A stretch of 63,749 nucleotides of DNA, the filler included, from Octopus bimaculoides (taxonomy: Eukaryota): assembly GCF_001194135.2 (NCBI RefSeq). It is 7 parts of 6 records of this genome, joined end to end, with 100 filler letters (N's around TTAATTAATTAA, not from the genome) between each part and the next. Parts side by side here need not be neighbours in the genome. Positions count along the whole stretch, not along the records: positions 48,408 to 53,576 come from NC_069004.1; 6 more parts are not named here. One strand, given 5' to 3'. The notes below the pieces were generated by a model. That model saw only the letters and a list, made by a program, of their open reading frames with translations. It made no database searches and was not told where the DNA came from. Position numbers and translations under genes: made by a program. Below, piece by piece: positions 13,085-59,839 of the stretch. The stretch's first letter is position 1, and every line of letters begins with the position of its first letter.

Positions 13085-13470
13085 TCGAATTTTGGCACAA
13101 GGACAATTCGGGGGAGGGACTTACATCGACCCCAGGGCTCAAATGGCTCTTGTTTTATCGACCCAGAACTCAGAGCGCAAAGACGGACAAAATGTCGCTA
13201 TGCATTTTGTCAGGCTTGCTAACATACAGTGTGCTCGCAGCCTTAAATTCATGGAATATTGGTTTTAAATTTTGGACAATGCCAGAAATTTTGGAGAAGT
13301 GTTCTGGTCGATAATATCGACCCAGTGTTCAACTGGTACTTAATCTATCATCTCCCGAAAAGATGAAAAGCAACGTCGACCTCGGTGGATTTTGAACCCG
13401 GAACGTGCAAACGGGCGAAATGCCGCTAAGCATTTCGCTCGTCGTGCTAACGATTCTGCCAGCCCATGAA
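13085..13470 (-). mobile_element. SINE family B copies
   Basis: gaaatgccgctaagcatttcgc...gtgctaacg head (reverse) and atcgaccccag core. Confidence 0.75.
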
Positions 13471-13887
13471 ATATTAACCACGTGAAAACATCGTTAACAA
13501 CTGAATAACGTCTCTCGCATCACATTAATAACCGGATAAAACATAGAAGGAAGAATTATTGAAGAGCATGTTAGTTGTTAAGCACACATGTAGATAAATT
13601 ATATTTAAATCCTAAATGAAATTGCTAACGAAAAGTTTTAATTCAAAAATTATAAAAATTGCAATTTATTTAAAAGGAAATGTATGATATTTAGTAAGGA
13701 TTATTTCATGTAAATATAGTGGAATTTATGGAGATAATAAGAATTATGTAGCGATTAGCAACTAATATCTTCCATTTCATATAATGTAAATAAATATTTG
13801 ATTGTTTAATAAGAATAAAGAACTGTTGGTAAATATTCTAGATTCATACATACATACCTACATACATACATACATATATATATATAC

Positions 13888-13919
<32 letters not shown>

Positions 13920-13937
13920 ATGTATACATACATATAT

Positions 13938-13991
<54 letters not shown>

Positions 13992-14452
13992 GAATTGTTA
14001 TGAATACGAACAAGTGGAAGTAAAGAAGAGATGAATTTGAAAATGCACACAGAATATATTAATATTAATTTGATTACTTTTTCAAAATATAGGAATACAC
14101 TTGACCGGTTTCACATTAGATTTCAAAATTGTGTAATGTATGGAGTTGTGTTGCGAATTTTGTCTATTATTCTGGTGGTTGTTATAAAAATGTAGTTTGT
14201 TTTTAAAGTAGGAATGTGGCTCAGAACGCTATCTCTTAAAATTTGATTGGTCAATATACATGTATTAAGCCGACGTGACAGTTGTGCGAGAAGATCAAAT
14301 AAAAACTTTTCACCATTGAATATATCATACGATAAGTAGAGGAGAGAGATATGAATAAATGATGTAATAATTGCTTGCGTAAAATGTTATAGAGAATTAT
14401 TGTTTATTATTCTGTCGAAGAAAAATGATCGTATCAATTAGTGCCAGTTATA

Positions 14453-14484
<32 letters not shown>

Positions 14485-15691
14485 ATGCGTTATCGGACAG
14501 TTCGATGGCGGCGTAGCAAAAAGCTTCGAAGTCACTGACAATATCAGTCTTGTTAAAAAATAATGAATATATACGTTACACTGAATATTGAGTGATCGTT
14601 TAGTTTAACGTAAAATAGTTTTTATTATAACTTGGAATGAAAAGAAACATCAATGTATATATATATATATATATATATAATGTATATATGTAAATATATA
14701 AATATATATATATANNNNNNNNNNATACGTTACACTGAATATTGAGTGATCGTTTAGTTTAACGTAAAATAGTTTTTATTATAACTTGGAATGAAAAGAA
14801 ACATCAATGTATATATATATATATATATGAATATATACGTCTAGGGAGGGATGAAGAGAGAGAAAGGGAGAAGGGAGAGTAAAAGAAGTGAGAATAATTT
14901 AACTCTGGAATATCTCAACATGGAATTTTCTTTATCTTTCAAAAGATAATCTCACCGGGAATCTCTTTGTGATCCAGAAAATGTTGAAGAATTTGTAGAA
15001 AACAAGGCTTTATAAAAAAATAACAGTAAAAATAAACTAGATTAGTATTTGACAAATTCTATAAATTTTTGTATTTTTTATAAAAACTGAATGACATTTA
15101 ATTCTAATCTGAAATATGATAAAAATGTGTAAAATTATACAAATTTATCAATAACGTAAACTGAAAAAGTATTTCCCGATATCTTCTTTCAAAAAAATTG
15201 TTATATAAACGGAATGATGAAATTTTCAGGTTAGTAAGTTTATAGAAAAAAAAATTCTGTATAAAAATGATGTAAGGTAAACTGATTAAAGAAAGAAGTC
15301 AGTGTGTGAATTATTAATGTTTTGTGGAAAGTACTAAGACGCAGCACGTAAATATTTATTGAAGAAGACATATTGAGATGGAAATGATGTTTGAAGAAGG
15401 AGTAAATAAAGAAGAAGGGAACACGGAATTCAGTAATGAATTTCATTGGCTTACAGCTGTTTCTGCTTTGAGATGCAATGCTTGTATATTCCCCTTGTAT
15501 ATTTACATACGTACACACATACACACACACACGCACATACACACACACACACACACACACCTGCGCACATATATATATATGTATAACGAAGAACTTCTTA
15601 CAGCCTTTGGTACAGATTAAACTTGATGAAGCTAAACTGTATTTCACAGAATTAATTTATAAATAAAACACAAAAATTTTTTAAATACATG

Positions 15692-16385
15692 TCATACGTA
15701 TCTTACATTTGGCCTACATTGGTTGCAATCAAATAATGCATTGCATTTCTCCCGACTCTCTGCGACATGGTCAGGTGGTAGACCAGCCATCTTGTTCTTA
15801 AATCTCGTGTTAGTTATATCTGAGATTTTAGTTTTGAAGACGCTTAACTTTAGAGTGTTGTTATATACTGGTGCATGTTGATCAAAAGTCTCTTCGATTG
15901 CGAACAAATTAGAGATTCTGATCGAAATGGCAGTAACGATGCTATCAATAGTAGATTTCGGATGATTGGAGGAGACTTTGATATATGAAATGGATTTGTT
16001 TGGCTTACGAAATGGGTAGTATAAACTCGTATCCAAATTCAGATTATCATCCAAGAAGTTCACCACTCTGGAGTTATCATAAAAAATAATGCTAAGATTA
16101 AAGAAATCCTTTAAGAAGCATCTCAGAGATTTCTTCAATCTATTCAATGCAGTTTTAGACTGGCCACGTACAGCTAGAAGTGCATCATCCTTATATAACC
16201 CTCAGTAAGGTGGGGGAAAACTATCCCTAATCTGCGAAAGGAGGTATAGGCCTACTAAATCGGTCCTTTGTGCTGAATCCATAGTAATGTCAATGAAATT
16301 AGTGGAATCAGCCCTCCTACGATTACACTCGTTGAAAGTGATGAGGGTCTCCTTGCCGTTAACATTATATCAGTAGCCAAACTCG
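15692..16385 (-). mobile_element. Penelope-like element RT fragment
   Basis: FDITMDS..DLVGLYLLSQI..GLYKDDAL (YRDD-type motif), VVNFLDDNLNL, YYPFRKPN, SSNHPKS. Confidence 0.9.
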
Positions 16386-16424
16386 GGATATTCGCAAATT
16401 TCATATGTGTGTGTGTATATATTA

Positions 16425-16459
<35 letters not shown>

Positions 16460-16472
16460 GTATATATATATG

Positions 16473-16504
<32 letters not shown>

Positions 16505-17269
16505 TGTATGTATGCCTGTGTATAAATGTATATATATATAAATGTATACATATATANNNNNNNNNNNNNNNNNNNNNNNNNNNNNNNNNNNNNNNNNNNN
16601 NNNNNNNNNNNNNNNNNNNNNNNNNNNNNNNNNNNNNNNNNNNNNNNNNNNNNNNNNNNNNNNNNNNNNNNNNNNNNNNNNNNNNNNNNNNNNNNNNNNN
16701 NNNNNNNNNNNNNNNNNNNNNNNNNNNNNNNNNNNNNNNNNNNNNNNNNNNNNNNNNNNNNNNNNNNNNNNNNNNNNNNNNNNNNNNNNNNNNNNNNNNN
16801 NNNNNNNNNNNNNNNNNNNNNNNNNNNNNNNNNNNNNNNNNNNNNNNNNNNNNNNNNNNNNNNNNNNNNNNNNNNNNNNNNNNNNNNNNNNNNNNNNNNN
16901 NNNNNNNNNNNNNNNNNNNNNNNNNNNNNNNNNNNNNNNNNNNNNNNNNNNNNNNNNNNNNNNNNNNNNNNNNNNNNNNNNNNNNNNNNNNNNNNNNNNN
17001 NNNNNNNNNNNNNNNNNNNNNNNNNNNNNNNNNNNNNNNNNNNNNNNNNNNNNNNNNNNNNNNNNNNNNNNNNNNNNNNNNNNNNNNNNNNNNNNNNNNN
17101 NNNNNNNNNNNNNNNNNNNNNNNNNNNNNNNNNNNNNNNNNNNNNNNNNNNNNNNNNNNNNNNNNNNNNNNNNNNNNNNNNNNNNNNNNNNNNNNNNNNN
17201 NNNNNNNNNNNNNNNNNNNNNATATATATATATATATATATATATATAGATAGATAGATAGATAGATAG

Positions 17270-17302
<33 letters not shown>

Positions 17303-18778
17303 GATAGATAGATCTTTACAGACCTTCATATACAGTATACACCGATTATAGAGTGAGTTGACAATTAAGTAGGGGGAGACAATATATGCATACCCAACTC
17401 ATCAGCAGATGGCACTAAAATATCTGCTGGAAGTCAACGTGTATCTAATCTAGACAATCTTTAACAACAGATGTTCGTCGATGCGCTACACCACCACCGT
17501 CGCCACCAGCGGCGGCGACGACGACGACGACGACGCCGACGGAAGGACTCCTCCATGCAACCTCCAAAGTTGTCATTTATATGTAAAGACTTAAGTCGGA
17601 TTATCTCTCCGTCCCTATATTCGTCTGTTCCCTTCAGTTTATATCTCGCTCTCTCAGTCTCTTGTCTTTCGCTATAATCTATCTCAAACCCATGTTTCTT
17701 TCAGCATCGTTTTATTTTAATCGAGCTTTGTTTAGTAAAACAGCCGATATCCATGTTAATGCGAGCCTCTAATCTGATCATCGTTGATGAAGATAACATC
17801 AACTCGAGAAAGTAAAGAGCAAATAAAATGAAGAATAATAAATACACTATAAAACATTCCTAAAAATATGTTTTGTAGTAAAAGAAGACAAGGTATTATT
17901 GTATATTGATAATAATATATACGGCGAAGAATTTCAAAATAAAATGTTGGCTTTGTATATCAGCGGTTGAAAATGGCGGAAGGTTGTGATGAAAGTTTTT
18001 TTTATATTGATGACGTATATAGAAGAGCAGAAAGATTATTCAGACATTGTTTAATCCTAGCCATCATTTTATATCGTATTGGTCTGGGTTTCCGTTTTAG
18101 AGTCTCAGTGATTAGACTCAGATAAACTTAATAGAGCAAATTTGCCGGTGACACGCCAACCCATTCTTACAAAGAAAAGTTTTCTTCCGTTTTCTCACGA
18201 ATATCTTCTATGATTCTTTTCGTGTCACCTGACGTCCTTCTGCCTGACGCAAAGTTTTAACTGTTGAACGTATTCTACTGCGTAGTTTCAGTAGATGAGC
18301 CAAGTATGCGACGTGGTTTGAACTAATGAGCTTCGTCTGTCAGGTGATTTCAAATGATGTGTCTTTCCCTAAGACACACCACGTGTTTTACACTGATATG
18401 TCTCATCTATGAAACAGTTTCAACATTTTCAGCCCTACATTTATACAGCGCTACCCGAATTTATTTTGTCGCAAAACGCTTATACGATTTTGCTAACAGC
18501 CAACCAAGTCTTAATGAAATACTAAATGACGTAAAAATTGTTTTAGAGAGAAAATTAATGTTTTAAACATATATAAAGCAAACGATCAAAAATTTCACGG
18601 ATAGATCATAAGTTATATTCAACAGTTGTTTCATTAGAGATAACGTCGTTAATTCATAAATGAAAAGCAAGATGGAATACACAGGGGAAAAAACCAGAGA
18701 GAAGAGGAGTAGAGACGAACAACAAATTGTCATTGAAGAGGTCACAGAATATGGGACAAAAGTCCTTTGACAAATACA

Positions 18779-48307: not shown

Positions 48308-48497
48308 NNNNNNNNNNNNNNNNNNNNNNNNNNNNNNNNNNNNNNNNNNNNTTAATTAATTAANNNNNNNNNNNNNNNNNNNNNNNNNNNNNNNNNNNNN
48401 NNNNNNNTATATATATATATATATTACAAATATATGTATGTACTATACATCTTTATGTCTATACTGTTATAATATAATATATCACTTATTGCCTTAC

Positions 48498-48655
48498 CTT
48501 GCCAATAAACTTTTGTTTTGTCTTTGATAACACCTGGTATTCGCAGAATAATTTTGAGTGTAATGTTGATTTGGATCAAGCCTTTAAATTCCTCCTCACT
48601 CTGATCAATTCGTCTTTGGAAATTTAGAAACATAAAGACAAGCAAACTACCATTT
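48498..48655 (-). CDS. SEA-domain mucin-like gene, SEA exon 3 (phase 2 to 1): NGSLLVFMFLNF...KTKVYWQ
   Basis: ttttcttgttttcag acceptor, CAAG|GTAAGG donor, 158 nt open; completes the LRNGSLLV motif. Confidence 0.9.
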
Positions 48656-49345
48656 CTGAAAACAAGAAAAACGAAAAGTTAATGTTTTATAACAAGACAC
48701 GAATATATTCTGTAAATATTTCTTTTTCCTTTCAAGAAGTTTTAATTTTAACCACAGAAATCACAAAATATTCCTTCTCAGAATTGTCGATCGCTACTCA
48801 ACTTCTCTCACCAGAGATTACGTTTAGTTTCTGCAAAGAATAATTTCTCAGTATTCAAAACAAAAGCATTAAAAATCATATAAATATCTCCCCAGTGTTG
48901 ATGCTTAGACCCTCAATATTCTTTCTTTTTATCTCTCCCTCTGCTTTGTTCTCTTCCAGTTTTTGTACCAATATGGAGAAACTAAATTTAGAAAGTGTTT
49001 CGATTTCCAACAAGTATTCTCTTTCAACTCTTGTCAACTATCGCCCTTTCAAATCTCTCGTAAAACATTGTAGACGTAATCAAATCGTAATTAACTATCA
49101 CCGTTTCCCATTGACTCGTTCCTACATCCAATTCGAACTCATTTCAATTATGTAACAGCTTTTATGTAAGGTTTGTATATTTTTAATAAGTGTACAATCT
49201 GATGTTTTCATGTTGTGTATCTTCTGCTCGTTCATTCTACGTGTTGTTCTATTGCTTAATCAGAATAAATGATAATCATTTGTGTTTGTGATATTCCGTA
49301 AATTTGTTTACGTAGTTCATCGTATAACACGAGAAATTAATGTCC

Positions 49346-49395
<50 letters not shown>

Positions 49396-49875
49396 CAGAG
49401 AGAGAGAGATAGATAGATAGAGAAAGTGTGTGTGTGTGTTTATCCCTTACCACTTGACAATCGATGTTGGTGTGTTTATGTTTCCGCAACCTAGCGTTTC
49501 GTCAAAAGAACTGATAAAATAAATCCCAGGTTTAACAAAAGAAGCAAGTACTGGGGTNNNNNNNNNNGCGCGTGCATGATTTATTTTTTTGTTCTCCTAG
49601 CGTCTCAAGTCTAGGAAAATGTTCGTTCATTAAAGTTTCTGTCCAGCGTTCTATGACTATGTTTCTCGACATTTTTCAATGTCGAGAAGAAAATATATAA
49701 TTTTAAAAAGGTTGAAACTGCCCCTAAAGGGCCAATTCCTACCTTGAAAACACAATAAAAAGAAAGTTTGGTGCTTCACACACCTTATATACAAAATTTC
49801 CAACAAAATATGGGCAATAAAAGGTCAAATAAACGTTTACCTTCGCAGCCGATGTGACAGCACGTCCGTGAGAAG

Positions 49876-49917
<42 letters not shown>

Positions 49918-50038
49918 AGTGATAGATAGATACATGCATACATACATTCATACATATGTACACACACATATATATGTTTATCATACACACAAGTAAACAT
50001 TATTGCCTTACGAAAGGGAAACCTGTCGTTCCACTGAC

Positions 50039-50109
50039 CTTAATTCGGTAACATTACTGCCAACATAATTGTCTTCAAGCTTACTGTCGTTTCTCATTGA
50101 TTCATCAAC
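50039..50109 (-). CDS. SEA-domain mucin-like gene, SEA exon 2 (phase 0 to 2): VDESMRNDSKLEDNYVGSNVTELR
   Basis: ttttctttttattaattttag acceptor, AAG|GTCAGT donor, 71 nt; phases fit both neighbours. Confidence 0.88.
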
Positions 50110-50634
50110 CTAAAATTAATAAAAAGAAAACATTTACAAATCTAAAAATACTCTGAGATTTTCGAAGGGGCGGCAGAAATGATCAAAAATCTTCGACATA
50201 ATAATACTGACTTTTATCTAAAGAAAACTTTTTCGATTCTTACAGCAAAATTGTGTAAAATCATAATACAAATAAATACATTTTTCACAAATCTTGATAT
50301 CACTACAATTCCTCCGTTGCTTGCGAAAATTTCGGTACATTATCAATGGCAATAGCGAAGTGATGGCAGCACATTCGATGGATGCATATCTGCATATTTG
50401 ATATAGAGTTGCACAAACGGACACTTGCAGAAAAACTCACATTCGTATACCCCACACACTTATGCATATACACAATATATACATAGTAGTGATAGTAAGC
50501 CAATAGTTACACTCTAGTCTTATCCACTTCGAGTTACACCGAAAATATTGTTTAATATTTATTTGCATACATATGCGCAAACACAAACAGAAAAATCCAA
50601 ACACGTTCACACGGTGTAAACATATATATTTGTG

Positions 50635-50672
<38 letters not shown>

Positions 50673-51597
50673 ACACCATGTGTGNNNNNNNNNNNNNNNN
50701 NNNNNNNNNNNNNNNNNNNNNNNNNNNNNNNNNNNNNNNNNNNNNNNNNNNNNNNNNNNNNNNNNNNNNNNNNNNNNNNNNNNNNNNNNNNNNNNNNNNN
50801 NNNNNNNNNNNNNNNNNNNNNNNNNNNNNNNNNNNNNNNNNNNNNNNNNNNNNNNNNNNNNNNNNNNNNNNNNNNNNNNNNNNNNNNNNNNNNNNNNNNN
50901 NNNNNNNNNNNNNNNNNNNNNNNNNNNNNNNNNNNNNNNNNNNNNNNNNNNNNNNNNNNNNNNNNNNNNNNNNNNNNNNNNNNNNNNNNNNNNNNNNNNN
51001 NNNNNNNNNNNNNNNNNNNNNNNNNNNNNNNNNNNNNNNNNNNNNNNNNNNNNNNNNNNNNNNNNNNNNNNNNNNNNNNNNNNNNNNNNNNNNNNNNNNN
51101 NNNNNNNNNNNNNNNNNNNNNNNNNNGATATATATATATATATATGGGAGAATATACAAATAATAACAACAGACGAGGACAGGTGGTGTAAATAACAAAA
51201 GGATATATTAGTATGACGCTCGGGAATACAGAAAGTCTTTGACGTTTCGAGCATATATATGCATATATATATATATATATGTATGTATTTATTTATACAC
51301 ACAAACAAACAAACGTATTGCCGAATATGATTATGCGCATGTATTTTTGTTAATGTGTCCCGCTATGATTGTCCCGTAAATCCGAGTCATTAGTTTTGTT
51401 GACGTATAAAATCTTAATCCTCACATTGCAGACGAAAATATGTCAGTCCGAAACGAATACAACTTCCACTATCAGAAAGCATGCACTATAATAGATCAGC
51501 CCGGTTTAAATGACTTCTAGAATCTATCTCCAAAATTTGAGAGTAGCGAGAACAGGAAACGTCTAAGAGACGTCTATGACGTTAATGTGAATCTTAC

Positions 51598-51710
51598 CTT
51601 TGTGGTGATTTCCTCAATTTTCTGCTGGGTCTCATTTGCGTCAAGGTTGGAATATATTCGTTTGTATTTTTCATCCAGGGACATTTCTAAGTTCATAACT
51701 ACGTTAGTAA
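51598..51710 (-). CDS. SEA-domain mucin-like gene, SEA exon 1 (phase 1 to 0): xTNVVMNLEMSLDEKYKRIYSNLDANETQQKIEEITTK
   Basis: ctaac branch point, poly-pyrimidine tract, cacag acceptor, AAG|GTAAGA donor, 113 nt. Confidence 0.9.
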
Positions 51711-52843
51711 CTGTGAAGGGAATTAAAAACAAGGTCAGGTTAGAAGGAAACCAATAATAACTATAAATCATTATACAAAAAGTTCTGCACAGAATCATAG
51801 AGGCAAAGAAGGGGACATTTCATAGGAAAATGGTCAGGAAACTTCGAGCACCAAACTCAAACTTAAAAGTCCAACGAAAGCACCGTTTGTTCAAATAAAT
51901 GTTCATACTTCACAAGAAGATTCCGGATGGCATTACAGACAAGATGAATTTTGTCTCACTACACAGACTAATCTAGTATACATCATTATCTATCTATCTA
52001 TCTATTTACTTCTCTCTCTTTCAAAATTCACTTGTATATATATATAAGTATATATATATNNNNNNNNNNNNNNNNNNNNNNNNNNNNNNNNNNNNNNNNN
52101 NNNNNNNNNNNNNNNNNNNNNNNNNNNNNNNNNNNNNNNNNNNNNNNNNNNNNNNNNNNNNNNNNNNNNNNNNNNNNNNNNNNNNNNNNNNNNNNNNNNN
52201 NNNNNNNNNNNNNNNNNNNNNNNNNNNNNNNNNNNNNNNNNNNNNNNNNNNNNNNNNNNNNNNNNNNNNNNNNNNNNNNNNNNNNNNNNNNNNNNNNNNN
52301 NNNNNNNNNNNNNNNNNNNNNNNNNNNNNNNNNNNNNNNNNNNNNNNNNNNNNNNNNNNNNNNNNNNNNNNNNNNNNNNNNNNNNNNNNNNNNNNNNNNN
52401 NNNNNNNNNNNNNNNNNNNNNNNNNNNNNNNNNNNNNNNNNNNNNNNNNNNNNNNNNNNNNNNNNNNNNNNNNNNNNNNNNNNNNNNNNNNNNNNNNNNN
52501 NNNNNNNNNNNNNNNNNNNNNNNNNNNNNNNNNNNNNNNNNNNNNNNNNNNNNNNNNNNNNNNNNNNNNNNNNNNNNNNNNNNNNNNNNNNNNNNNNNNN
52601 NNNNNNNNNNNNNNNNNNNNNNNNNNNNNNNNNNNNNNNNNNNNNNNNNNNNNNNNNNNNNNNNNNNNNNNNNNNNNNNNNNNNNNNNNNNNNNNNNNNN
52701 NNNNNNNNNNNNNNNNNNNNNNNNNNNNNNNNNNNNNNNNNNNNNNNNNNNNNNNNNNNNNNNNNNNNNNNNNNNNNNNNNNNNNNNNNNNNNNNNNNNN
52801 NNNNNNNNNNNNNNNNNNNNNNNNNNNNNNNNNNNNNNNNNNN

Positions 52844-53576
52844 GTGTATGGCACTTCAATTGTGGTTGTTGATGTCTGTTCAGTGGTTGTTGATTGTTGT
52901 TCAGTGGTTGTTGATGTATCTTCAGTGGTTGTTGATGTCTGTTCAGTGGTTGTCGATGTCTGTTCACTGGTTGTTGATATTTGTTCAGTGGTTGTTGATG
53001 GCTTTTCAGTGGTTGTTGATTGTTGTTCAGTGGTTGCTGATGTATGTTGAGTAGTTGTTGATGTCTGTTCAGTGGTTTTTGATGGTTGTACAGTGGTTGT
53101 TGATGTCTGTTCAGTGGTTGTTGATGGTTCTTCGGTGGTTGTCGATGTCTGTTCACTGGTTGTTGATGTTTGTTCAGTGGTTGTTGATTGTTGTTCAGTG
53201 GTTGTTGATGGCTGTTCAGTGGTTGTTGATTGTTGTTCAGCGGTTGCTGATGTCTGTTCAGTGGTTGTTGATGGTTGTTCAGTGGTTGTTGATGTCTGTT
53301 CAGTGGTTGTCGATGGTTGTTCAGCGGTTGTTGATGTCTGTTCAGTGGTTGTCGATGGTTGTTCAGTGGTTGTTGATTGTTGTTCAGTGGTTGTTGATGT
53401 CTGTTCAGTGGTTGTTGATGTCTGTTCACTTGTTGGTGATGTCTGTTCACTGGTTGTTGATGTTTGTTCATTGATTGTTGATTGTTGTTCAGTGGTTGTT
53501 GATGGTTGTTCAGTGGCTGTTGATTGCTGTTCAGTGGTTGTTGATGATTGTTCAGTGGTTGTTGATTGTTGTTCAG
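52844..53576 (-). CDS. Mucin PTS tandem-repeat exon (partial, both ends in gaps), (TTTEQxS)n
   Basis: About 34 units of 21 bp with substitutions but no frameshift, ending TTTIEVPYT; same strand as and upstream of the SEA exons. Confidence 0.85.
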
Positions 53577-55744: not shown

Positions 55745-55813
55745 ACTGGCTGTTGTTGCTGTTGCTGGTGGTGGTGGTGATGGTGGTGGTGGTGGTGGTG
55801 CTGCTGCTGCTGC

Positions 55814-55844
<31 letters not shown>

Positions 55845-55990
55845 GGTGGTGCTGGTGCTTGTGGTGGTGCTGGTGCTGGNNNNNNNNNNNTAGTAGTACG
55901 ATGAGGAGGAGGAGGAGGAATAGTTGTAGTGCTGGTGCTGGTGCTGGTGGTGGCAGTGGTGGTGGTGGTGGTGGTGTTATTGTTGTTGGT
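55745..55990. repeat. (GGT)n/(GCT)n/(GGA)n trinucleotide array
   Basis: Direct reading. Confidence 0.9.
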
Positions 55991-56307
55991 ACTGTTGTTT
56001 GTTTGTATCACCTTATTCCAGGTATTATTGTTTATGAATCTTTTTATCTCCTGAGTAAAATGGCAGTTTCTGTGTTGCTTTGTTGTGATTCAAAGTATTT
56101 TCAAGTAAAATTCTTTTACTTCACATTTTGTGCTTGTAAGTTCGTGTGGGAATTTTCAATGTTTGAGGTTCAACTAACGTTTTTTGATGTTCTTTATTGT
56201 CTTTTAAGCAAAAGTTGGTTGTCATTTTTCTGAGTTTTTCTCACACTTACTGTTAGCCTCATTTTGCTAGTTTTCTATGTCAACTTGACTGTCATCACCA
56301 ATTTGGT

Positions 56308-56745
56308 TTTAACCCTTCACAAGCATTCAGATTACGCTGTCAAATATGATGTTTATTTATTCACTTTGCTTTGATTTAATAATGCATTACTTCATAGATT
56401 TAGGATTTTGATGATGTGATTGTTTATTCTTAGAATGACATCACACGGGAGGTATGAGAGGATATATCTGGTCAGTTTTAACATAAAACAGGTCGTATAT
56501 TTTGACCAGATATGGTCAATTTAACCATTCAGCATTTGAATTATTCTATCAAATGCAATGTTTATTTATCCACATTATTTTGAATTAATCATGCATTATC
56601 TCATAGCTTTAAGATTTCAATGATGCGATTGTTTATTTTCAGAATGACATTGCAGGGTAGCTATGAGAGACCAGATCTATCCAGTTTGAACATAAAACAG
56701 GGAGAACATTTGGACCAGATATAACTAGTTTAAACACTAAAAGGT
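56308..56745. mobile_element. Two more copies of the piggyBac-like MITE
   Basis: Starts TTAACCC; same unit as 54400-55280. Confidence 0.6.
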
Positions 56746-56964
56746 CAAGGGTAAGAACTACTCCAAACTATAAAGTATTTCTCTAAATTGATAAGCTGCT
56801 TGATGTTTTTAGACTTTACATAATCCTAGAGAGAGTTTACATCCATTAATTATCAGTAAATCAAAATTTTTCAATTTTCTATCTTATATTTTAGACAATT
56901 TTATAGAAGCCATGTTTTCTAAACTTCCTCTGCCTCTGGTACAAAAGAAAAGCAACATTCATCA

Positions 56965-57320
56965 CCATCATCATCATCGTTTAACGTCCGCTTTCCATGC
57001 TAGCATGGGTTGGACGATTTGACTGAGGTCTGGATAGCCAGCAGCTGCACCAAGCTCCAATCTGATCTGGCAGAGTTTCTACAACTGGATGTCCTTCCTA
57101 ACACCAACCACTCCGAGAGAGTAGTGGGTGCTTTTTACGTGCCACCAGCACGAGGGCCAGTCACACAGTACTGGTAATGGCCACGCTCAAAATGGTGTTT
57201 TTTATGTGCCACCTGAACGGGAGCCAGTCCAGCAGCACTGGCAATGACCTCGCTCGAATGATTTTCTAACGTGCCACCAGCACAAGTGCCAGTAAGGCAA
57301 CGCTGGTAACGATTACGCTC
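56965..57320 (-). mobile_element. SINE family D (also 63720-63749)
   Basis: catcatcatcgtttaacgtccgctttccatgctagc terminus. Confidence 0.8.
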
Positions 57321-57429
57321 TAACATTGGATATACTAAAAGAAACTTTCTGTAATAGCAGGCTAAAATGGTATGACGCTAGATGTTTTATTTACAACCAT
57401 TAAACTCTGTAATATTTATGGTACACTTA

Positions 57430-58030
57430 AGGTGGTGAGCTGACAGAATCATTAGCATGCTGAGCAAAATGCTTAGTAGTATTTCATCCATTTACATGCT
57501 CTGGGTTCAAATTCCACCAAGGTCCACTTTGACTTTTGTCCTTTTGGAGTTGGTAAAATAAGTGTCAGTTGAACAATGGAGCCAATGTAATTGACTTTTC
57601 CCTTCCCCTGAACTTCCTGACCCCATGCCAAAATTTGAAACCAATATTTATGGGACAGTTAAAGACTTTTCAAGAACTATACAATTTTTTATCGGACATG
57701 TGAAACAACCAAAACATATTTTTCTTCCACTCTTGGACTCATACTGATGGTTATCCTGTTTCTATGATGTTTAATTGACCAAGATCACATTCCCCCTGAA
57801 TGGGGTAGTAATCCAGAGCAGAGTTTAAGGTAAACAATTCCGAGGTATTGAGGGTCAAGTTGTTTACATCAACCACCCCTGTACTTGCCTGGTATTTTAT
57901 TTTAATCAAACCCAAAGGGATGAAAAGGAAAGGCAAAGCTGGATTCTGTGGCATTTGAACTCTGAAAGTAAAGAGACAGAAGAAATACTGTTAAATACAT
58001 GCTAATAATTCTGCTACCTCACTGCCTTAC
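57430..58030. mobile_element. Two CpG-decayed SINE family B copies (57430-57650 +, 57850-58030 -)
   Basis: ggtgagctgacagaatcattagcatgctgagcaaaatgcttag head. Confidence 0.7.
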
Positions 58031-58472
58031 CAGAAGAATTACCCCTAAATAAATGTTACATCAACACAAATGGATAAACACGAACTTTTTGAACACAGAT
58101 TTATCATCTGATTAGTATATCTAGAAATCTCCTCTGAAGTATTTCCTCCTTGATCTTATTACTGATATTTATTCCGGTCGTAACCATCTTGACTTTTGAT
58201 TAGGCATAATGAATCTAATGTCTCCTAAACATTCTTTTTTTTAAGATGGTAGAATGTAATTTGAAAGAGCATCCATTTCTAGTTGGTCAAGCAACAGTGT
58301 AAAAGGCTTCCACATCAGCTCAAACTTCACTGCACAAACTCAAACTTCAAAGTTCCCAGGTCAACTTTAACAGAATAGACCAAGGGTATCTAGAAATACA
58401 TTATCCAAAATGTCCTACTTAAAACAGTACTGTATAATTTGTGGGAGGTTTCATTTTTGTTAGGTTTTGCAG

Positions 58473-58569
58473 GTTATGTGGCCTCGTAGAGTTACCTTTT
58501 GTTGACTTGTGGAACAACTATTCTTACAAATGGTGGTCTCAGTACAATAGACCGACTGACATACTTTAA
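58473..58569 (+). CDS. Possible terminal exon of an unidentified gene: LCGLVELPFVDLWNNYSYKWWSQYNRPTDIL*
   Basis: tttttgttaggttttgcag acceptor, TAA at 58567-58569, AATAAA at 58615-58620; lies in the CpG-depleted block; a competing minus-strand reading exists. Confidence 0.35.
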
Positions 58570-59004
58570 TGACAGTGTGAGAACGAGCAAGTCTCTTTCC
58601 TAGAAAGAAACAACAATAAATTACGTTCAGACTTTATTTACTATCTGTCACAACTGGTGAATAACAGTGCTGTTGGTTACATGGTTCCATTGAATCAAAT
58701 GCAGGTTCTTGGCATTTCTCATGCTGAGAGCAACAAGAGGAAGCATCACTGATTTTTTTCAGTTTGTTGCAAATCTTTATAAGTTCTTTGTGAATATAGA
58801 TTGGCAAAGTATACACATACCGCTCAAAAAGCAAATTCTAATATCAGCTAATGGAGTCGGTATATTATTTATAGAGTCTCATAACAACCAATCTTGCATT
58901 GCTGAATGCTTCTGTATTTAAAAATTCTTTCTGGAATGGAAGAATAATTTAATACTCATCAGAAAAGTATAGCATTTGCTCTTTCTGCATGGTGTTCTCT
59001 ACCA

Positions 59005-59074
59005 TAGCTTTCAGCCGATCGATCAAAGCTTTGTGAGCCAATCTGTTAGATGGAAACTGAAAGAAGCCCATTGT

Positions 59075-59151
<77 letters not shown>

Positions 59152-59375
59152 TGTGTGTCTGTGTGTGTGTCTGTGCTTGTCCCTCACCACCACTTGACAA
59201 CAGTGTTGGTGGGTTTACATCCCTACAACTTAGCAGTTCAGCAAAAGAGAGCGATAAAATAAGTAACAGGTTCAAAAAAATAAATACATATGCGATTGAG
59301 TCATTCAACTAAAATTCATCAACGTGGTGCCCCAGCATGGCCACAGTGCAATGATTGACACAAATGAAAGATGAA
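59005..59375 (+). mobile_element. SINE family A, CpG-decayed, with (GT)n
   Basis: Family motifs with CpG loss. Confidence 0.75.
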
Positions 59376-59469
59376 AGATTTACATTATTTATGATAATAA
59401 TGATGATAATAATAATAATAATAATAATAACAATAATAATAATAATAATAATAATATTAATAATAATAA

Positions 59470-59839
59470 TGAATGCCCAGATGCAGTACCAGGCAGTGGC
59501 TCTCATGGTTTCTGATCTTAATTAGTTGGAAGTGTTATGTATATTGTTTTGTCTTGGCATAAAAGATGGGCTACAGCAAATATTCTGCTTAATACCACAG
59601 ATTTGCTTGTCAGTTGTTTGACCTTAACCAGTTGAGCATGTCCCTTGGTGGCTGACGATATGTGCATTTCTGATCATGAGCAGAAGTAGTGGGGGAGCAT
59701 CATAGCCATGTGTTGAGAGGAATTCTTTGGGGTTTGAATAATTCACCTTTGGAAACATGGGTGTTTTGCTCAACATCCTTAAACAACCCTTTATTCAGAG
59801 ACATTTTGAGCAGGATGGGCTACTTGACCTGAAGAAAAT
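59470..59839. repeat. Interspersed repeat of unclassified family
   Basis: Follows an (AAT)n run; resembles an abundant octopus repeat as recalled, not verified. Confidence 0.45.

What the first reader, a model, noticed from the sequence alone, without database searches (positions are those of the whole stretch)
48498..53576. Hidden SEA-domain mucin gene assembled from four exons
Three exons with canonical splice signals and interlocking phases (1-0, 0-2, 2-1) give xTNVVMNLEMSLDEKYKRIYSNLDANETQQKIEEITTKVDESMRNDSKLEDNYVGSNVTELRNGSLLVFMFLNFQRRIDQSEEEFKGLIQINITLKIILRIPGVIKDKTKVYWQ. This is about 114 aa with five N-glycosylation sequons and LRNG/SLLV, which resembles the G/S[VI]VV autoproteolysis site of MUC1- and MUC3-type SEA domains. 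A PTS repeat exon lies immediately upstream. PTS-SEA architecture is classic for vertebrate membrane mucins; cephalopod skin, sucker and gut mucins are poorly characterised as far as I know. The signal-peptide and C-terminal exons were not located.
Basis: partly seen in the sequence, partly recalled or inferred. Interest (0 to 1): 0.7.

Follow-up and report, generated by a model that had tools for sequence, protein, structure and literature searches.

The report
Octopus mucin-like gene fragment with SEA domain
This short octopus scaffold carries a real piece of a cell-surface, mucin-like glycoprotein gene: a threonine/serine-rich repeat followed by a three-exon SEA domain that keeps the conserved self-cleavage site. 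The gene is genuine, but part of it is already annotated and it belongs to a known kind of protein.

Summary
On the minus strand, three exons (51710-51598, 50109-50039, 48655-48498) have canonical AG/GT sites and phases 1-0, 0-2, 2-1.

- **SEA domain.** The peptide passes Pfam SEA above the curated cutoff (29.3 vs 26.4 bits). With a 20-row alignment it folds confidently (pLDDT 91.6) into beta-alpha-beta-beta-alpha-beta. Its seven best PDB matches are all SEA domains.
- **Cleavage site.** G64-S65 sits in the beta2-beta3 hairpin. These are the only invariant columns across octopus and fish relatives. G64 aligns with the last residue of the MUC1 and ADGRF1 cleavage-fragment chains in the PDB.
- **Repeat.** Upstream, 34 in-register 21-nt units encode (EQxSTTT)n, 59% Thr+Ser. 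The join to exon A is hidden by the 52060-52843 gap; the other two gaps are intronic.
- **Not hidden.** RefSeq XP_014771815.1 (Octopus bimaculoides LOC106870304) already uses the same two introns, but it is truncated at both ends and lacks the repeat.
- **Family layout.** Paralogous loci in O. sinensis and O. vulgaris alternate phase 1-1 PTS exons with the same three-exon SEA module. Two predicted genes begin with an N-terminal type II membrane anchor, unlike type I MUC1/MUC3.

Verdict: a new member of a known kind, of modest interest.

The parts
52844..53576 (-). 3' part of a T/S-rich tandem-repeat (PTS-like) exon. It holds 34 units of 21 nt encoding (EQ[QTP]STTT)n and is cut by the piece's edge at 53576 and by the assembly gap at 52843.
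   Evidence: TRF score 975. The units are in perfect 21-nt register, the frame is open for 243 codons, and T+S is 59%. The last readable codons TTIEVPY resemble TTIEFST near the end of the PTS exon of O. sinensis P0005 in the same frame.
52060..52843 (.). Assembly gap that hides the 3' end and donor of the repeat exon and the start of the intron before exon A.
   Evidence: The open frame runs into the N run. The far side (52059 downward) is (TA)n and stop-rich.
51598..51710 (-). SEA exon A (phase 1 in, 0 out). It encodes beta1 and most of helix alpha1: xTNVVMNLEMSLDEKYKRIYSNLDANETQQKIEEITTK.
   Evidence: Splice sites. The acceptor position and phase are conserved in L001, L003, L004 and L005. 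Secondary structure.
50110..51597 (-). Intron A/B, which contains the gap 50685-51126.
   Evidence: The same intron is used by RefSeq XP_014771815.1. The paralog intron is 1.1-1.4 kb.
50039..50109 (-). SEA exon B (phase 0 in, 2 out). It encodes the end of alpha1 and beta2: VDESMRNDSKLEDNYVGSNVTEL(R).
   Evidence: The unusual gtcagt donor is conserved in O. sinensis L001 (both modules) and L004. This is the most conserved exon, at 75-80% nt identity to the paralogs.
48656..50038 (-). Intron B/C, which contains the 10-N gap 49558-49567.
48498..48655 (-). SEA exon C (phase 2 in, 1 out). It encodes the hairpin turn, beta3, alpha2 and beta4: (R)NGSLLVFMFLNFQ...KTKVYWQ.
   Evidence: The donor after W-[QE]-G in phase 1 is conserved in L003 and L005, and the reading frame is not conserved beyond it between O. 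vulgaris and O. bimaculoides.
48646..48651 (-). Codons GGT AGT for G64-S65, the putative autoproteolytic scissile bond.
   Evidence: These are the only invariant columns in the 20-row alignment A4. They lie in the beta2-beta3 turn of the model. G64 aligns with the C-terminal residue of PDB cleavage-fragment chains 8hc0_B, 6bsb_A and 2acm_A.
48408..48497 (-). Start of the next intron. The RefSeq model reads through it to a stop at 48424. The following exon lies beyond the piece's edge.

Best explanation
The piece is one PTS-SEA module of a large, heavily glycosylated cell-surface (mucin-like) glycoprotein gene of Octopus bimaculoides, truncated at both ends by a short scaffold.

**Shown**
- A T/S-rich 7-aa tandem-repeat exon lies upstream of three exons that splice into a complete SEA domain.
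- The SEA domain has the canonical beta-alpha-beta-beta-alpha-beta fold.
- Its beta2-beta3 hairpin carries the family-invariant Gly-Ser at the position where MUC1 and ADGRF1 cleave themselves, with no insertion relative to ADGRF1.
- Exon C leaves in phase 1, so the coding sequence continues beyond the piece.

**Inferred**
- The repeat is densely O-glycosylated and forms an extended stalk.
- On folding in the ER, the SEA domain undergoes strain-driven N-to-O acyl shift at Ser65 and splits between G64 and S65.
- The two halves stay together through the shared beta-sheet and part only under mechanical force. This would let the glycosylated part be shed without tearing the membrane.
- By analogy with the closest octopus paralogs (O. 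sinensis XP_036368988, O. vulgaris CAI9740437), the protein is probably tethered by an N-terminal type II signal anchor. It may continue downstream with further PTS/SEA modules. Its likely role is as glycocalyx or mucus-barrier protein.
For: - **Exons and phases:**
- **Existing model:** the same introns are used by RefSeq XP_014771815.1.
- **Pfam SEA:** 29.3 bits against a cutoff of 26.4. Paralogs score 33.1 and 26.3 bits.
- **Fold:** AF2 with alignment A4 gives pLDDT 91.6 and pTM 0.83, with the turn at N63-G64-S65.
- **Structure matches:** the top seven Foldseek hits are all SEA domains (TMPRSS6, MUC16, mouse transmembrane-protease SEA 2e7v), E 3e-6 to 1e-4 and TMq 0.61-0.72. Other ferredoxin-like folds then follow at E>=4e-3 and TMq about 0.3-0.5.
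- **Cleavage site:** G64 and S65 are the only invariant columns. The profile hits ADGRF1 'FRNGSIVA' without gaps. Fragment chains 8hc0_B, 6bsb_A and 2acm_A all end at the aligned Gly.
- **Mechanism in the literature:** cleavage occurs in the beta2-beta3 loop at GSVVV/GSIVA, driven by conformational strain (PMC6954182, PMC10556640).
- **Repeat:**
- **Family layout:** in O. sinensis L001 the PTS exon is phase 1-1 and alternates with the same three-exon module. O. vulgaris shows the same.
- **Type II anchor:** P0004, P0005 and P0012 have a K/R cluster on the N-terminal side of a single hydrophobic segment at about residues 70-95. P0005 has anchor, then a (TDQTSTT)n 7-aa repeat, then SEA.
Against: - There is no transcript or protein evidence. 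All relatives used are computational gene models.
- The join between the repeat exon and exon A lies in an assembly gap.
- The residues after Ser are LLVF rather than the beta-branched VVV/IVV/IVA of proven self-cleaving SEA domains, so cleavage competence is unproven.
- N63 is itself a sequon (NGS), although ADGRF1 has the same.
- None of the fetched loci is a close orthologue: protein identity is at most 54%, and exon B is 75-80% identical at the nucleotide level. Anchor type and downstream modules are therefore extrapolated from paralogs.
- The repeat is proline-poor. Two other frames of it are also open, and a synonymous/non-synonymous count did not separate the T/S frame from its antisense partner.
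Confidence: 0.8

Rival explanations
1. The module belongs to a secreted or type I/GPI-anchored protein with alternating PTS and SEA domains, like the frog and fish families or MUC16. It would start with a signal peptide rather than a type II anchor.
For: - The best non-octopus relatives are of this type. Newt 'mucin-1' has 7 SEA modules, a signal peptide and a C-terminal TM. Cyprinid multi-SEA proteins have a signal peptide and a hydrophobic C-terminus.
- Secreted alternating SEA/PTS proteins in Xenopus are mentioned in PMC4948705.
- Neither end of the gene is visible in the window.
Against: - The only octopus relatives with a visible N-terminus (P0004, P0005, P0012) have internal signal anchors and no signal peptide.
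- P0005 shares the 7-aa TSTTT[DE]Q-type repeat and the TTIE[FV] repeat ending with the window.
Confidence: 0.3
2. The SEA domain is structurally intact but does not cleave itself, as in MUC16 SEA or HAT-type SEA domains. It would act only as a rigid spacer or interaction module between glycosylated stalks.
For: - Many SEA domains do not cleave.
- The post-Ser residues are LLVF, not S[VI]VV.
- In a multi-module protein, most SEA units need not act as a membrane-proximal fuse.
Against: - The G-S pair is invariant across 20 octopus and fish modules, while everything around it varies.
- Hairpin length equals that of ADGRF1, a cleaved SEA. Non-cleaving 2e7v, 8vis and 1ivz need insertions at this point in the same profile alignment.
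Confidence: 0.35
3. The piece is a decaying, non-expressed duplicate module (pseudogene fragment) on an unplaced scaffold, or the repeat is a non-coding minisatellite unrelated to the SEA exons.
For: - The scaffold is short and full of gaps.
- No expression data are available.
- Several frames of the repeat are open, so openness alone is weak evidence.
Against: - All three exons are open with intact canonical splice sites, and the peptide folds with high confidence.
- The repeat unit is a multiple of 3, with no register-breaking indel in 34 units.
- Paralog arrays have units of 21, 24 and 27 nt, and in L001 the array is a 1029-codon ORF with phase-compatible splice sites.
Confidence: 0.1

Closest known systems
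Self-cleaving SEA domains of MUC1 and adhesion GPCR ADGRF1/GPR110 (PDB 2ACM, 6BSB, 8HC0)
   Same: - Same fold.
- Same G-S dipeptide in the beta2-beta3 hairpin, with the same hairpin length as ADGRF1 (ungapped alignment); MUC1's chain ends place its Gly at the same profile position.
- ADGRF1 even shares the 'RNGS' motif.
- A heavily glycosylated region lies next to the domain in MUC1.
   Different: - The residues after Ser are LLVF instead of VVVQ or IVAG.
- This is not an orthologue.
- The membrane topology of the octopus family appears inverted: an N-terminal anchor, against a C-terminal TM (MUC1) or 7TM (ADGRF1).
- Cleavage has not been demonstrated.
Alternating PTS/SEA mucin-like proteins of amphibians and fishes, and MUC16 (tandem SEA modules)
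   Same: - These are the nearest non-cephalopod sequence relatives: newt mucin-1 with 7 SEA modules at E=9e-13, and cyprinid multi-SEA proteins.
- In the octopus paralogous loci, SEA modules alternate with T/S-rich repeats in the same way.
- The invariant [RS]-x-G-S-[IVL] motif is shared.
   Different: - The vertebrate proteins start with a signal peptide and are secreted or C-terminally anchored.
- The octopus genes with a visible 5' end start with a cytoplasmic tail and a signal anchor.
- The octopus PTS arrays are single giant exons of 21-27-nt units, and the SEA module is split into three exons with phases 1-0-2-1.
Type II transmembrane serine proteases (enteropeptidase, HAT/TMPRSS11D, matriptase, TMPRSS6)
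   Same: - N-terminal cytoplasmic tail, signal anchor, then an extracellular SEA domain, exactly as in the O. vulgaris paralog P0004.
- TMPRSS6 and TMPRSS11D-type SEA domains are among the best structural matches.
   Different: - No protease, LDLa, CUB or SRCR domain was detected in any octopus relative.
- In the octopus family the SEA is followed or preceded by T/S-rich repeats instead.
RefSeq model XP_014771815.1 (LOC106870304, Octopus bimaculoides, 'uncharacterized protein')
   Same: It is 100% identical over residues 6-114 of the spliced peptide and uses the same two introns.
   Different: - It starts at an internal Met inside beta1.
- It omits the repeat exon.
- It reads through the exon C donor into 24 intron-encoded residues.

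Membership tests
SEA domain (Pfam PF01390) | Sequence match to the family HMM above the curated gathering score | tested here: met
   29.3 bits against a cutoff of 26.4, E=9.6e-7, profile positions 11-89 of 106. The paralog P0002 scores 33.1 bits.
SEA domain (Pfam PF01390) | Alpha/beta sandwich fold with beta-alpha-beta-beta-alpha-beta order | tested here: met
   AF2 pLDDT 91.6, with elements E2-12, H26-44, E53-62, E66-76, H82-100 and E110-113. The top seven Foldseek PDB hits are all SEA domains, TMq 0.61-0.72. This is a prediction, not a solved structure.
Self-cleaving SEA subclass (MUC1, MUC3/12/17, ADGRF1/F5 type) | Gly-Ser at the tight beta2-beta3 hairpin, at the position of the known scissile bond, without loop insertions | tested here: met
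   G64 and S65 are invariant in A4 and lie in the turn of the model. The alignment to ADGRF1 FRNGSIVA is ungapped. PDB fragment chains 8hc0_B, 6bsb_A and 2acm_A end at the aligned Gly.
Self-cleaving SEA subclass (MUC1, MUC3/12/17, ADGRF1/F5 type) | Consensus G|S[VI]V[VA]: beta-branched hydrophobic residues after Ser | tested here: inconclusive
   The window has G|SLLVF and the octopus paralogs have G|SLIAD and G|SILAK. These are hydrophobic and predicted as a strand, but Leu replaces Val/Ile. No data exist on whether this supports cleavage.
Self-cleaving SEA subclass (MUC1, MUC3/12/17, ADGRF1/F5 type) | Demonstrated autoproteolysis with non-covalently associated fragments | not testable with these tools
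   This needs protein expression and mass spectrometry.
Vertebrate type I SEA-type membrane mucins (MUC1, MUC3, MUC12, MUC13, MUC17) | Long T/S(/P)-rich tandem-repeat domain N-terminal to the SEA domain in one polypeptide | tested here: inconclusive
   The repeat is present on the same strand upstream, and the arrangement is conserved in paralogs with compatible phases. In the window, the junction lies in the gap 52060-52843. Proline is only 4%.
Vertebrate type I SEA-type membrane mucins (MUC1, MUC3, MUC12, MUC13, MUC17) | N-terminal signal peptide, with a transmembrane helix and cytoplasmic tail directly C-terminal to the SEA domain | not testable with these tools
   Both ends of the gene lie outside the piece. 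In the octopus paralogs the feature is not met: they have an N-terminal signal anchor, and a PTS exon follows exon C.
Vertebrate type I SEA-type membrane mucins (MUC1, MUC3, MUC12, MUC13, MUC17) | Orthology to a vertebrate MUC gene | tested here: not met
   The only similarity is the SEA domain itself, at 15-27% identity. The nearest relatives are octopus paralogs.
Alternating PTS/SEA multi-module proteins (MUC16-like; frog and fish families) | Two or more SEA modules separated by PTS regions in one gene | tested here: inconclusive
   This is seen in paralogous loci L001, L002 and L003. The window shows a single module whose last exon exits in phase 1, the same phase in which PTS exons enter in L001.
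Type II transmembrane serine proteases | C-terminal trypsin-like protease domain after the SEA stem | tested here: not met
   No protease domain was found in any octopus relative (Pfam scans for P0002, P0004, P0005, P0012; precomputed Pfam columns). The downstream part of the window's own gene is unseen.

The most novel reading that the evidence does not exclude
Octopuses carry an expanded family of giant, type II-anchored membrane mucins. These are built from phase 1-1 modules, each a PTS mega-exon plus a three-exon self-cleaving SEA domain, and the window holds one such module. That would be an independent, topologically inverted invention of SEA-type membrane mucins in a lophotrochozoan. 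It would run against the view, which I recall from Lang et al. 2007 (PNAS 104:16209; I could not read the paper here), that transmembrane mucins arose in the vertebrate lineage.
Probability: 0.35. Interest if true: 0.5.

Novelty: new member of a known kind. Interest (0 to 1): 0.3.

Why it matters
Cephalopod surface and mucus glycoproteins are poorly described. A full-text search found no paper holding all three terms 'SEA domain', 'mucin' and 'cephalopod'. An O. vulgaris skin-mucus proteome names only mucin-4-like and mucin-19-like proteins.

This fragment and its paralogs show that current octopus annotations break large PTS/SEA genes into small 'uncharacterized' pieces. In places they also call antisense ORFs over the repeat arrays.

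A corrected gene model would give a candidate glycocalyx component for skin, sucker or gut epithelia. It would also give a non-vertebrate SEA domain in which to test how far the strain-driven self-cleavage mechanism tolerates a G|SLLV site. The result would extend known biology rather than overturn it.

Tried and rejected
- **Single-sequence AF2** gave an unusable model (pLDDT 52). It was superseded by the alignment-based model.
- **PDB sequence searches** with the peptide alone and with an octopus-only profile (A2) found no SEA chain. Only the broader profile A4 did.
- **Exact look-up of the RefSeq protein P0001** found no contig. The O. bimaculoides chromosome locus L005, which holds the P0012 anchor gene, does not contain this piece and shares only microsatellites with it. 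The scaffold could therefore not be placed.
- **Synonymous versus non-synonymous counts** among the 34 repeat units disfavoured the QQPLN frame (6 synonymous of 69 changes). They did not separate the T/S frame (23 of 69) from two opposite-strand frames (20 and 25 of 69). One of those, SGC*CLF, has a stop in every unit, and the other is VVVDVCS. The frame was instead assigned from strand, homology to P0005 and the multiple-of-3 register.
- **Exon C was not found in L004**; a 100-N gap follows its exon B.
- **An upstream in-frame ATG at 51798** (MILCRTFCIMIYSYYWFPSNLTLFLIPFTV...) was considered as a signal-peptide start. I rejected it because it is the translated polypyrimidine tract, and the acceptor position and phase are conserved in four paralogous loci.
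- **The RefSeq C-terminal tail after WQ** was rejected as coding. The donor is conserved, and the frame beyond it is not conserved between O. vulgaris and O. bimaculoides orthologues.
- **Rfam and tRNA scans** of the piece found nothing.
- **Pei & Grishin 2017 and Lang et al. 2007** are not held in the library.
It was left out of every later alignment (A2-A4) and of the local seed profile built from A1.

Full report
**1. What is in the sequence**

The piece 48408-53576 is AT-rich (27-43% GC in its readable stretches) and full of microsatellites, with three N gaps. The feature lies on the minus strand. Three short open segments are bounded by canonical splice signals:

| Exon | Coordinates | Length | Acceptor | Donor | Phase in / out |
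|---|---|---|---|---|---|
| A | 51710-51598 | 113 nt | ttcccttcacag\| | AAG\|gtaaga | 1 / 0 |
| B | 50109-50039 | 71 nt | ttttag\| | AAG\|gtcagt | 0 / 2 |
| C | 48655-48498 | 158 nt | ttttcag\| | CAAG\|gtaagg | 2 / 1 |

Upstream, 52862-53576 is a 21-nt tandem repeat of 34 copies, TRF score 975. Written in a 21-nt register, all 34 units line up without a register-breaking indel. The minus-strand frame starting at 53574 is open for 243 codons and reads (EQ[QTP]STTT)n. Its composition is Thr 43%, Ser 16%, Gln 16%, Glu 14% and Pro 4%.

**2. The gaps**

No SEA exon is within 340 nt of a gap. The gap 50685-51126 lies in intron A/B, and 49558-49567 lies in intron B/C.

The order, strand and spacing of A, B and C match those in ungapped paralogous loci. 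The spliced peptide also yields a complete domain. These two gaps therefore hide nothing that matters.

The third gap (52060-52843) does matter. The repeat ORF runs straight into it (...TSTTTIEVPY|N), and the far side is (TA)n and stop-rich. The end of the repeat exon and its donor are unread, so the in-frame link to exon A cannot be checked here.

Indirect support comes from O. sinensis P0005. The last readable codons (ACC ACA ATT GAA GTG CCA TAC, TTIEVPY) resemble the stretch ACG ACC ATT GAA TTC TCA ACT (TTIEFST) in the coding frame of its repeat exon. That exon ends 16 codons after this stretch at G|gtagga in phase 1 and splices to its exon A.

**3. Is it a SEA domain?**

Yes, on every test I could run.

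- **Pfam.** PF01390 scores 29.3 bits (E=9.6e-7), above the curated cutoff of 26.4. The paralogs P0002 and P0004 score 33.1 and 26.3 bits.
- **Remote relatives.** An exhaustive phmmer scan of 1.84 billion representatives found octopus paralogs at E=3e-14 to 5e-8, a newt 'mucin-1' with seven SEA modules at 9e-13, and cyprinid multi-SEA proteins.
- **Fold.** A single-sequence AF2 run failed (pLDDT 52). With a 20-row alignment of the window peptide, two octopus paralogs and fish SEA modules (A4), the model reached pLDDT 91.6 and pTM 0.83. Its elements are beta1 2-12, alpha1 26-44, beta2 53-62, a three-residue turn N63-G64-S65, beta3 66-76, alpha2 82-100 and beta4 110-113.
- **Structure comparison.** The seven best Foldseek matches in the PDB are all SEA domains: TMPRSS6 9nrc, MUC16 7sa9/8gkl/8vm1, 1ivz, and the mouse transmembrane-protease SEA 2e7v. 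They have E 3e-6 to 1e-4 and TMq 0.61-0.72. Next comes a sharp drop to generic ferredoxin-like folds and other proteins at E>=4e-3 and TMq about 0.3-0.5.

**4. The G/S site**

In alignment A4, the only two invariant columns are G64 and S65.

A profile built from A4 hits several SEA chains in the PDB: ADGRF1 (E=8.7e-8), TMPRSS11D, the transmembrane-protease SEA 2e7v, the MUC16-like 1ivz, and MUC1. The ADGRF1 alignment is ungapped through 'QFRNGSIVAG'.

Three PDB chains that are N-terminal cleavage fragments all end at profile position 60, the aligned Gly: 8hc0_B (ADGRF1, ending ...FRNG), 6bsb_A and 2acm_A (MUC1). By contrast, 2e7v, 8vis and 1ivz need insertions or lack the G-S pair at this point.

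The literature places SEA autoproteolysis in the beta2-beta3 loop at GSVVV or GSIVA. It attributes cleavage mainly to conformational strain in the tight hairpin, not to the identity of neighbouring residues (PMC6954182; PMC10556640; PMC9564314).

The window's G|SLLVF therefore has the right residues, position and hairpin length. Leu-Leu in place of Val/Ile-Val is untested, so I rate self-cleavage as likely (about 0.6) but not shown.

**5. Not hidden**

The first homology search returned XP_014771815.1, 'uncharacterized protein LOC106870304 [Octopus bimaculoides]'. It is 133 aa, 100% identical to the peptide, and carries a precomputed PF01390 hit.

Its sequence starts at the internal Met of exon A (MNLEMSL...). 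It uses the same A/B and B/C introns, then reads through the exon C donor for 24 residues (GKAISDILYYNSIDIKMYSTYIYL) to the stop at 48424.

The model is nevertheless incomplete:
- It loses five residues of beta1.
- It omits the repeat exon.
- It adds an intron-encoded tail.

The donor after W-[QE]-G is conserved in O. vulgaris (L003) and O. bimaculoides (L005) paralogs. The frame beyond it is not conserved between those two species.

**6. Family context**

I fetched four paralogous loci from O. sinensis and O. vulgaris, plus the O. bimaculoides anchor-gene locus L005.

- **O. sinensis L001.** It reads: 27-nt repeat, SEA exons A/B/C, a 3-kb 27-nt repeat array (a 1029-codon T/S-rich ORF), SEA exons A/B/C again, and then a 14.5-kb 24-nt array.
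  - Exon boundaries, phases and even the gtcagt donor of exon B match the window.
  - The repeat exon enters in phase 1 (ttttacag|AT ACT GAA) and leaves in phase 1 (ACA G|gtaag).
  - The whole [PTS + A + B + C] unit is therefore phase 1-1 symmetric, which is the layout expected for tandem module duplication.
- **O. vulgaris L002 and L003.** They show the same alternation on one strand over more than 90 kb.
- **Anchored models.** Two models with a visible 5' end, P0004 (O. vulgaris) and P0005 (O. sinensis), begin the same way. The O. bimaculoides fragment P0012 matches P0004 from the shared motif onward.
  - They have a tail of about 65 residues with a shared motif, TPFWP[FY][IL]F[HN]DPT.
  - A K/R cluster follows, then one hydrophobic segment.
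  - There is no signal peptide. By the positive-inside rule this is a type II signal anchor.
- **What follows the anchor.** In P0004 it is a SEA domain directly. In P0005 it is a (TDQTSTT)n 7-aa repeat and then SEA. P0005 is the closest match to the window's repeat type and repeat ending.

None of these loci is a close orthologue of the window's module. Protein identity is at most 54%, and exon B is 75-80% identical at the nucleotide level. The anchor and downstream modules are therefore inferences for this gene. All of these relatives are computational models.

**7. Mechanism proposed**

- **Shown:** the gene structure, the SEA fold (predicted), the conserved G-S in the hairpin, and the adjacent T/S-rich repeat.
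- **Inferred from established SEA and mucin biology:** the repeat is densely O-glycosylated and extended. The SEA domain cleaves itself at G64|S65 during folding. Its halves stay associated through the continuous beta-sheet and separate under force, which sheds the distal glycosylated part.
- **Inferred from paralogs:** the protein has an N-terminal type II anchor and possibly further PTS/SEA modules after exon C.

The rivals are a secreted or type I multi-SEA protein, a non-cleaving SEA spacer, and a pseudogene or non-coding minisatellite. Each is listed with its refuting test.

**8. Comparison with known families and novelty**

The domain is a bona fide SEA domain of the G-S class.

The gene is not a member of the vertebrate MUC1/3/12/13/17 group. 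There is no orthology, and the topology in paralogs is different. It is not a type II serine protease either, because no protease domain was found in any relative.

It works most like the alternating PTS/SEA proteins of frogs and fishes, and like MUC16. Secreted proteins of this kind in Xenopus are mentioned in PMC4948705.

No paper in the library holds all three terms 'SEA domain', 'mucin' and 'cephalopod'. An O. vulgaris skin-mucus proteome names only mucin-4-like and mucin-19-like proteins.

I classify the finding as a new member of a known kind. Its most novel allowed reading is a lophotrochozoan, type II-anchored family of SEA-type membrane mucins.

**9. Verdict**

'Hidden' is overstated, and the membrane-mucin analogy holds only at the level of domain adjacency.
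- Interest is 0.3. The work gives a better model of a partly annotated gene and points to a mis-annotated gene family, but a specialist would not find it very surprising.

Noticed in passing
L002 13083-17958 (-) and L003 55857-59511 (-): The O. vulgaris annotation carries long gene models (1507 aa and 2698 aa) on the strand opposite the SEA exons. They lie exactly over the 27-nt PTS arrays (13110-17912 and 55781-59511). These are probably antisense ORFs of the repeat called by mistake, while the sense T/S-rich exon is unannotated.
   Followed up: partly
L003 then L002 (O. vulgaris OX597837.1, 47.46 to 47.37 Mb, one strand): On one strand, in order, lie the P0004 model (type II anchor plus SEA), a 27-nt PTS array, the P0006 model (SEA), another PTS array and another SEA module. 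These may all be pieces of a single giant gene split into several small 'hypothetical protein' models.
   Followed up: partly
L001 13205-27699: This is a 14.5-kb array of a 24-nt unit (about 624 copies) downstream of the second SEA module in O. sinensis, and the RefSeq model P0002 skips it. The T-rich frame changes several times within it, and the C-terminal part of P0002 reads the alternative 'HQQPL' frame. The changes could be assembly indels or real frame decay.
   Followed up: no
P0004 residues 29-47, P0005 residues 30-48, P0012 residues 1-19: The cytoplasmic N-terminal tails of the anchored octopus SEA proteins share a motif, TPFWP[FY][IL]F[HN]DPT[VT]xW[IV]. It has no Pfam match, and its function is unknown.
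   Followed up: no
P0016: A 'hypothetical protein [Providencia sp. PROV020]' on a 1,647-bp contig is a cyprinid-type double-SEA protein. It is nearly identical to fish zgc:111983-like proteins. This is most likely fish DNA contaminating a bacterial assembly.
   Followed up: no
window 49350-49423, 49876-49956, 50636-50668, 51128-51145, 52035-52059: The two large assembly gaps are flanked directly by (TA)n runs. (GA)n and (AGAT)n arrays lie in intron B/C on either side of the 10-N gap. This probably explains why the scaffold is broken there, and why the piece itself ends in (TA)n on one side and in the 21-nt repeat on the other.
   Followed up: no
window 51574-51798 (-): A 74-aa ORF starts at an in-frame ATG upstream of exon A (MILCRTFCIMIYSYYWFPSNLTLFLIPFTV...) and looks like a hydrophobic leader. 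It is in fact the translated polypyrimidine tract of the intron. The acceptor position and phase are conserved in paralogs.
   Followed up: yes
P0003 / P0010 (Lissotriton helveticus 'mucin-1'): The newt protein annotated as mucin-1 has seven near-identical SEA modules separated by T/S-rich linkers. It also has a signal peptide and a C-terminal TM. That is a MUC16-like layout under a MUC1 name.
   Followed up: no
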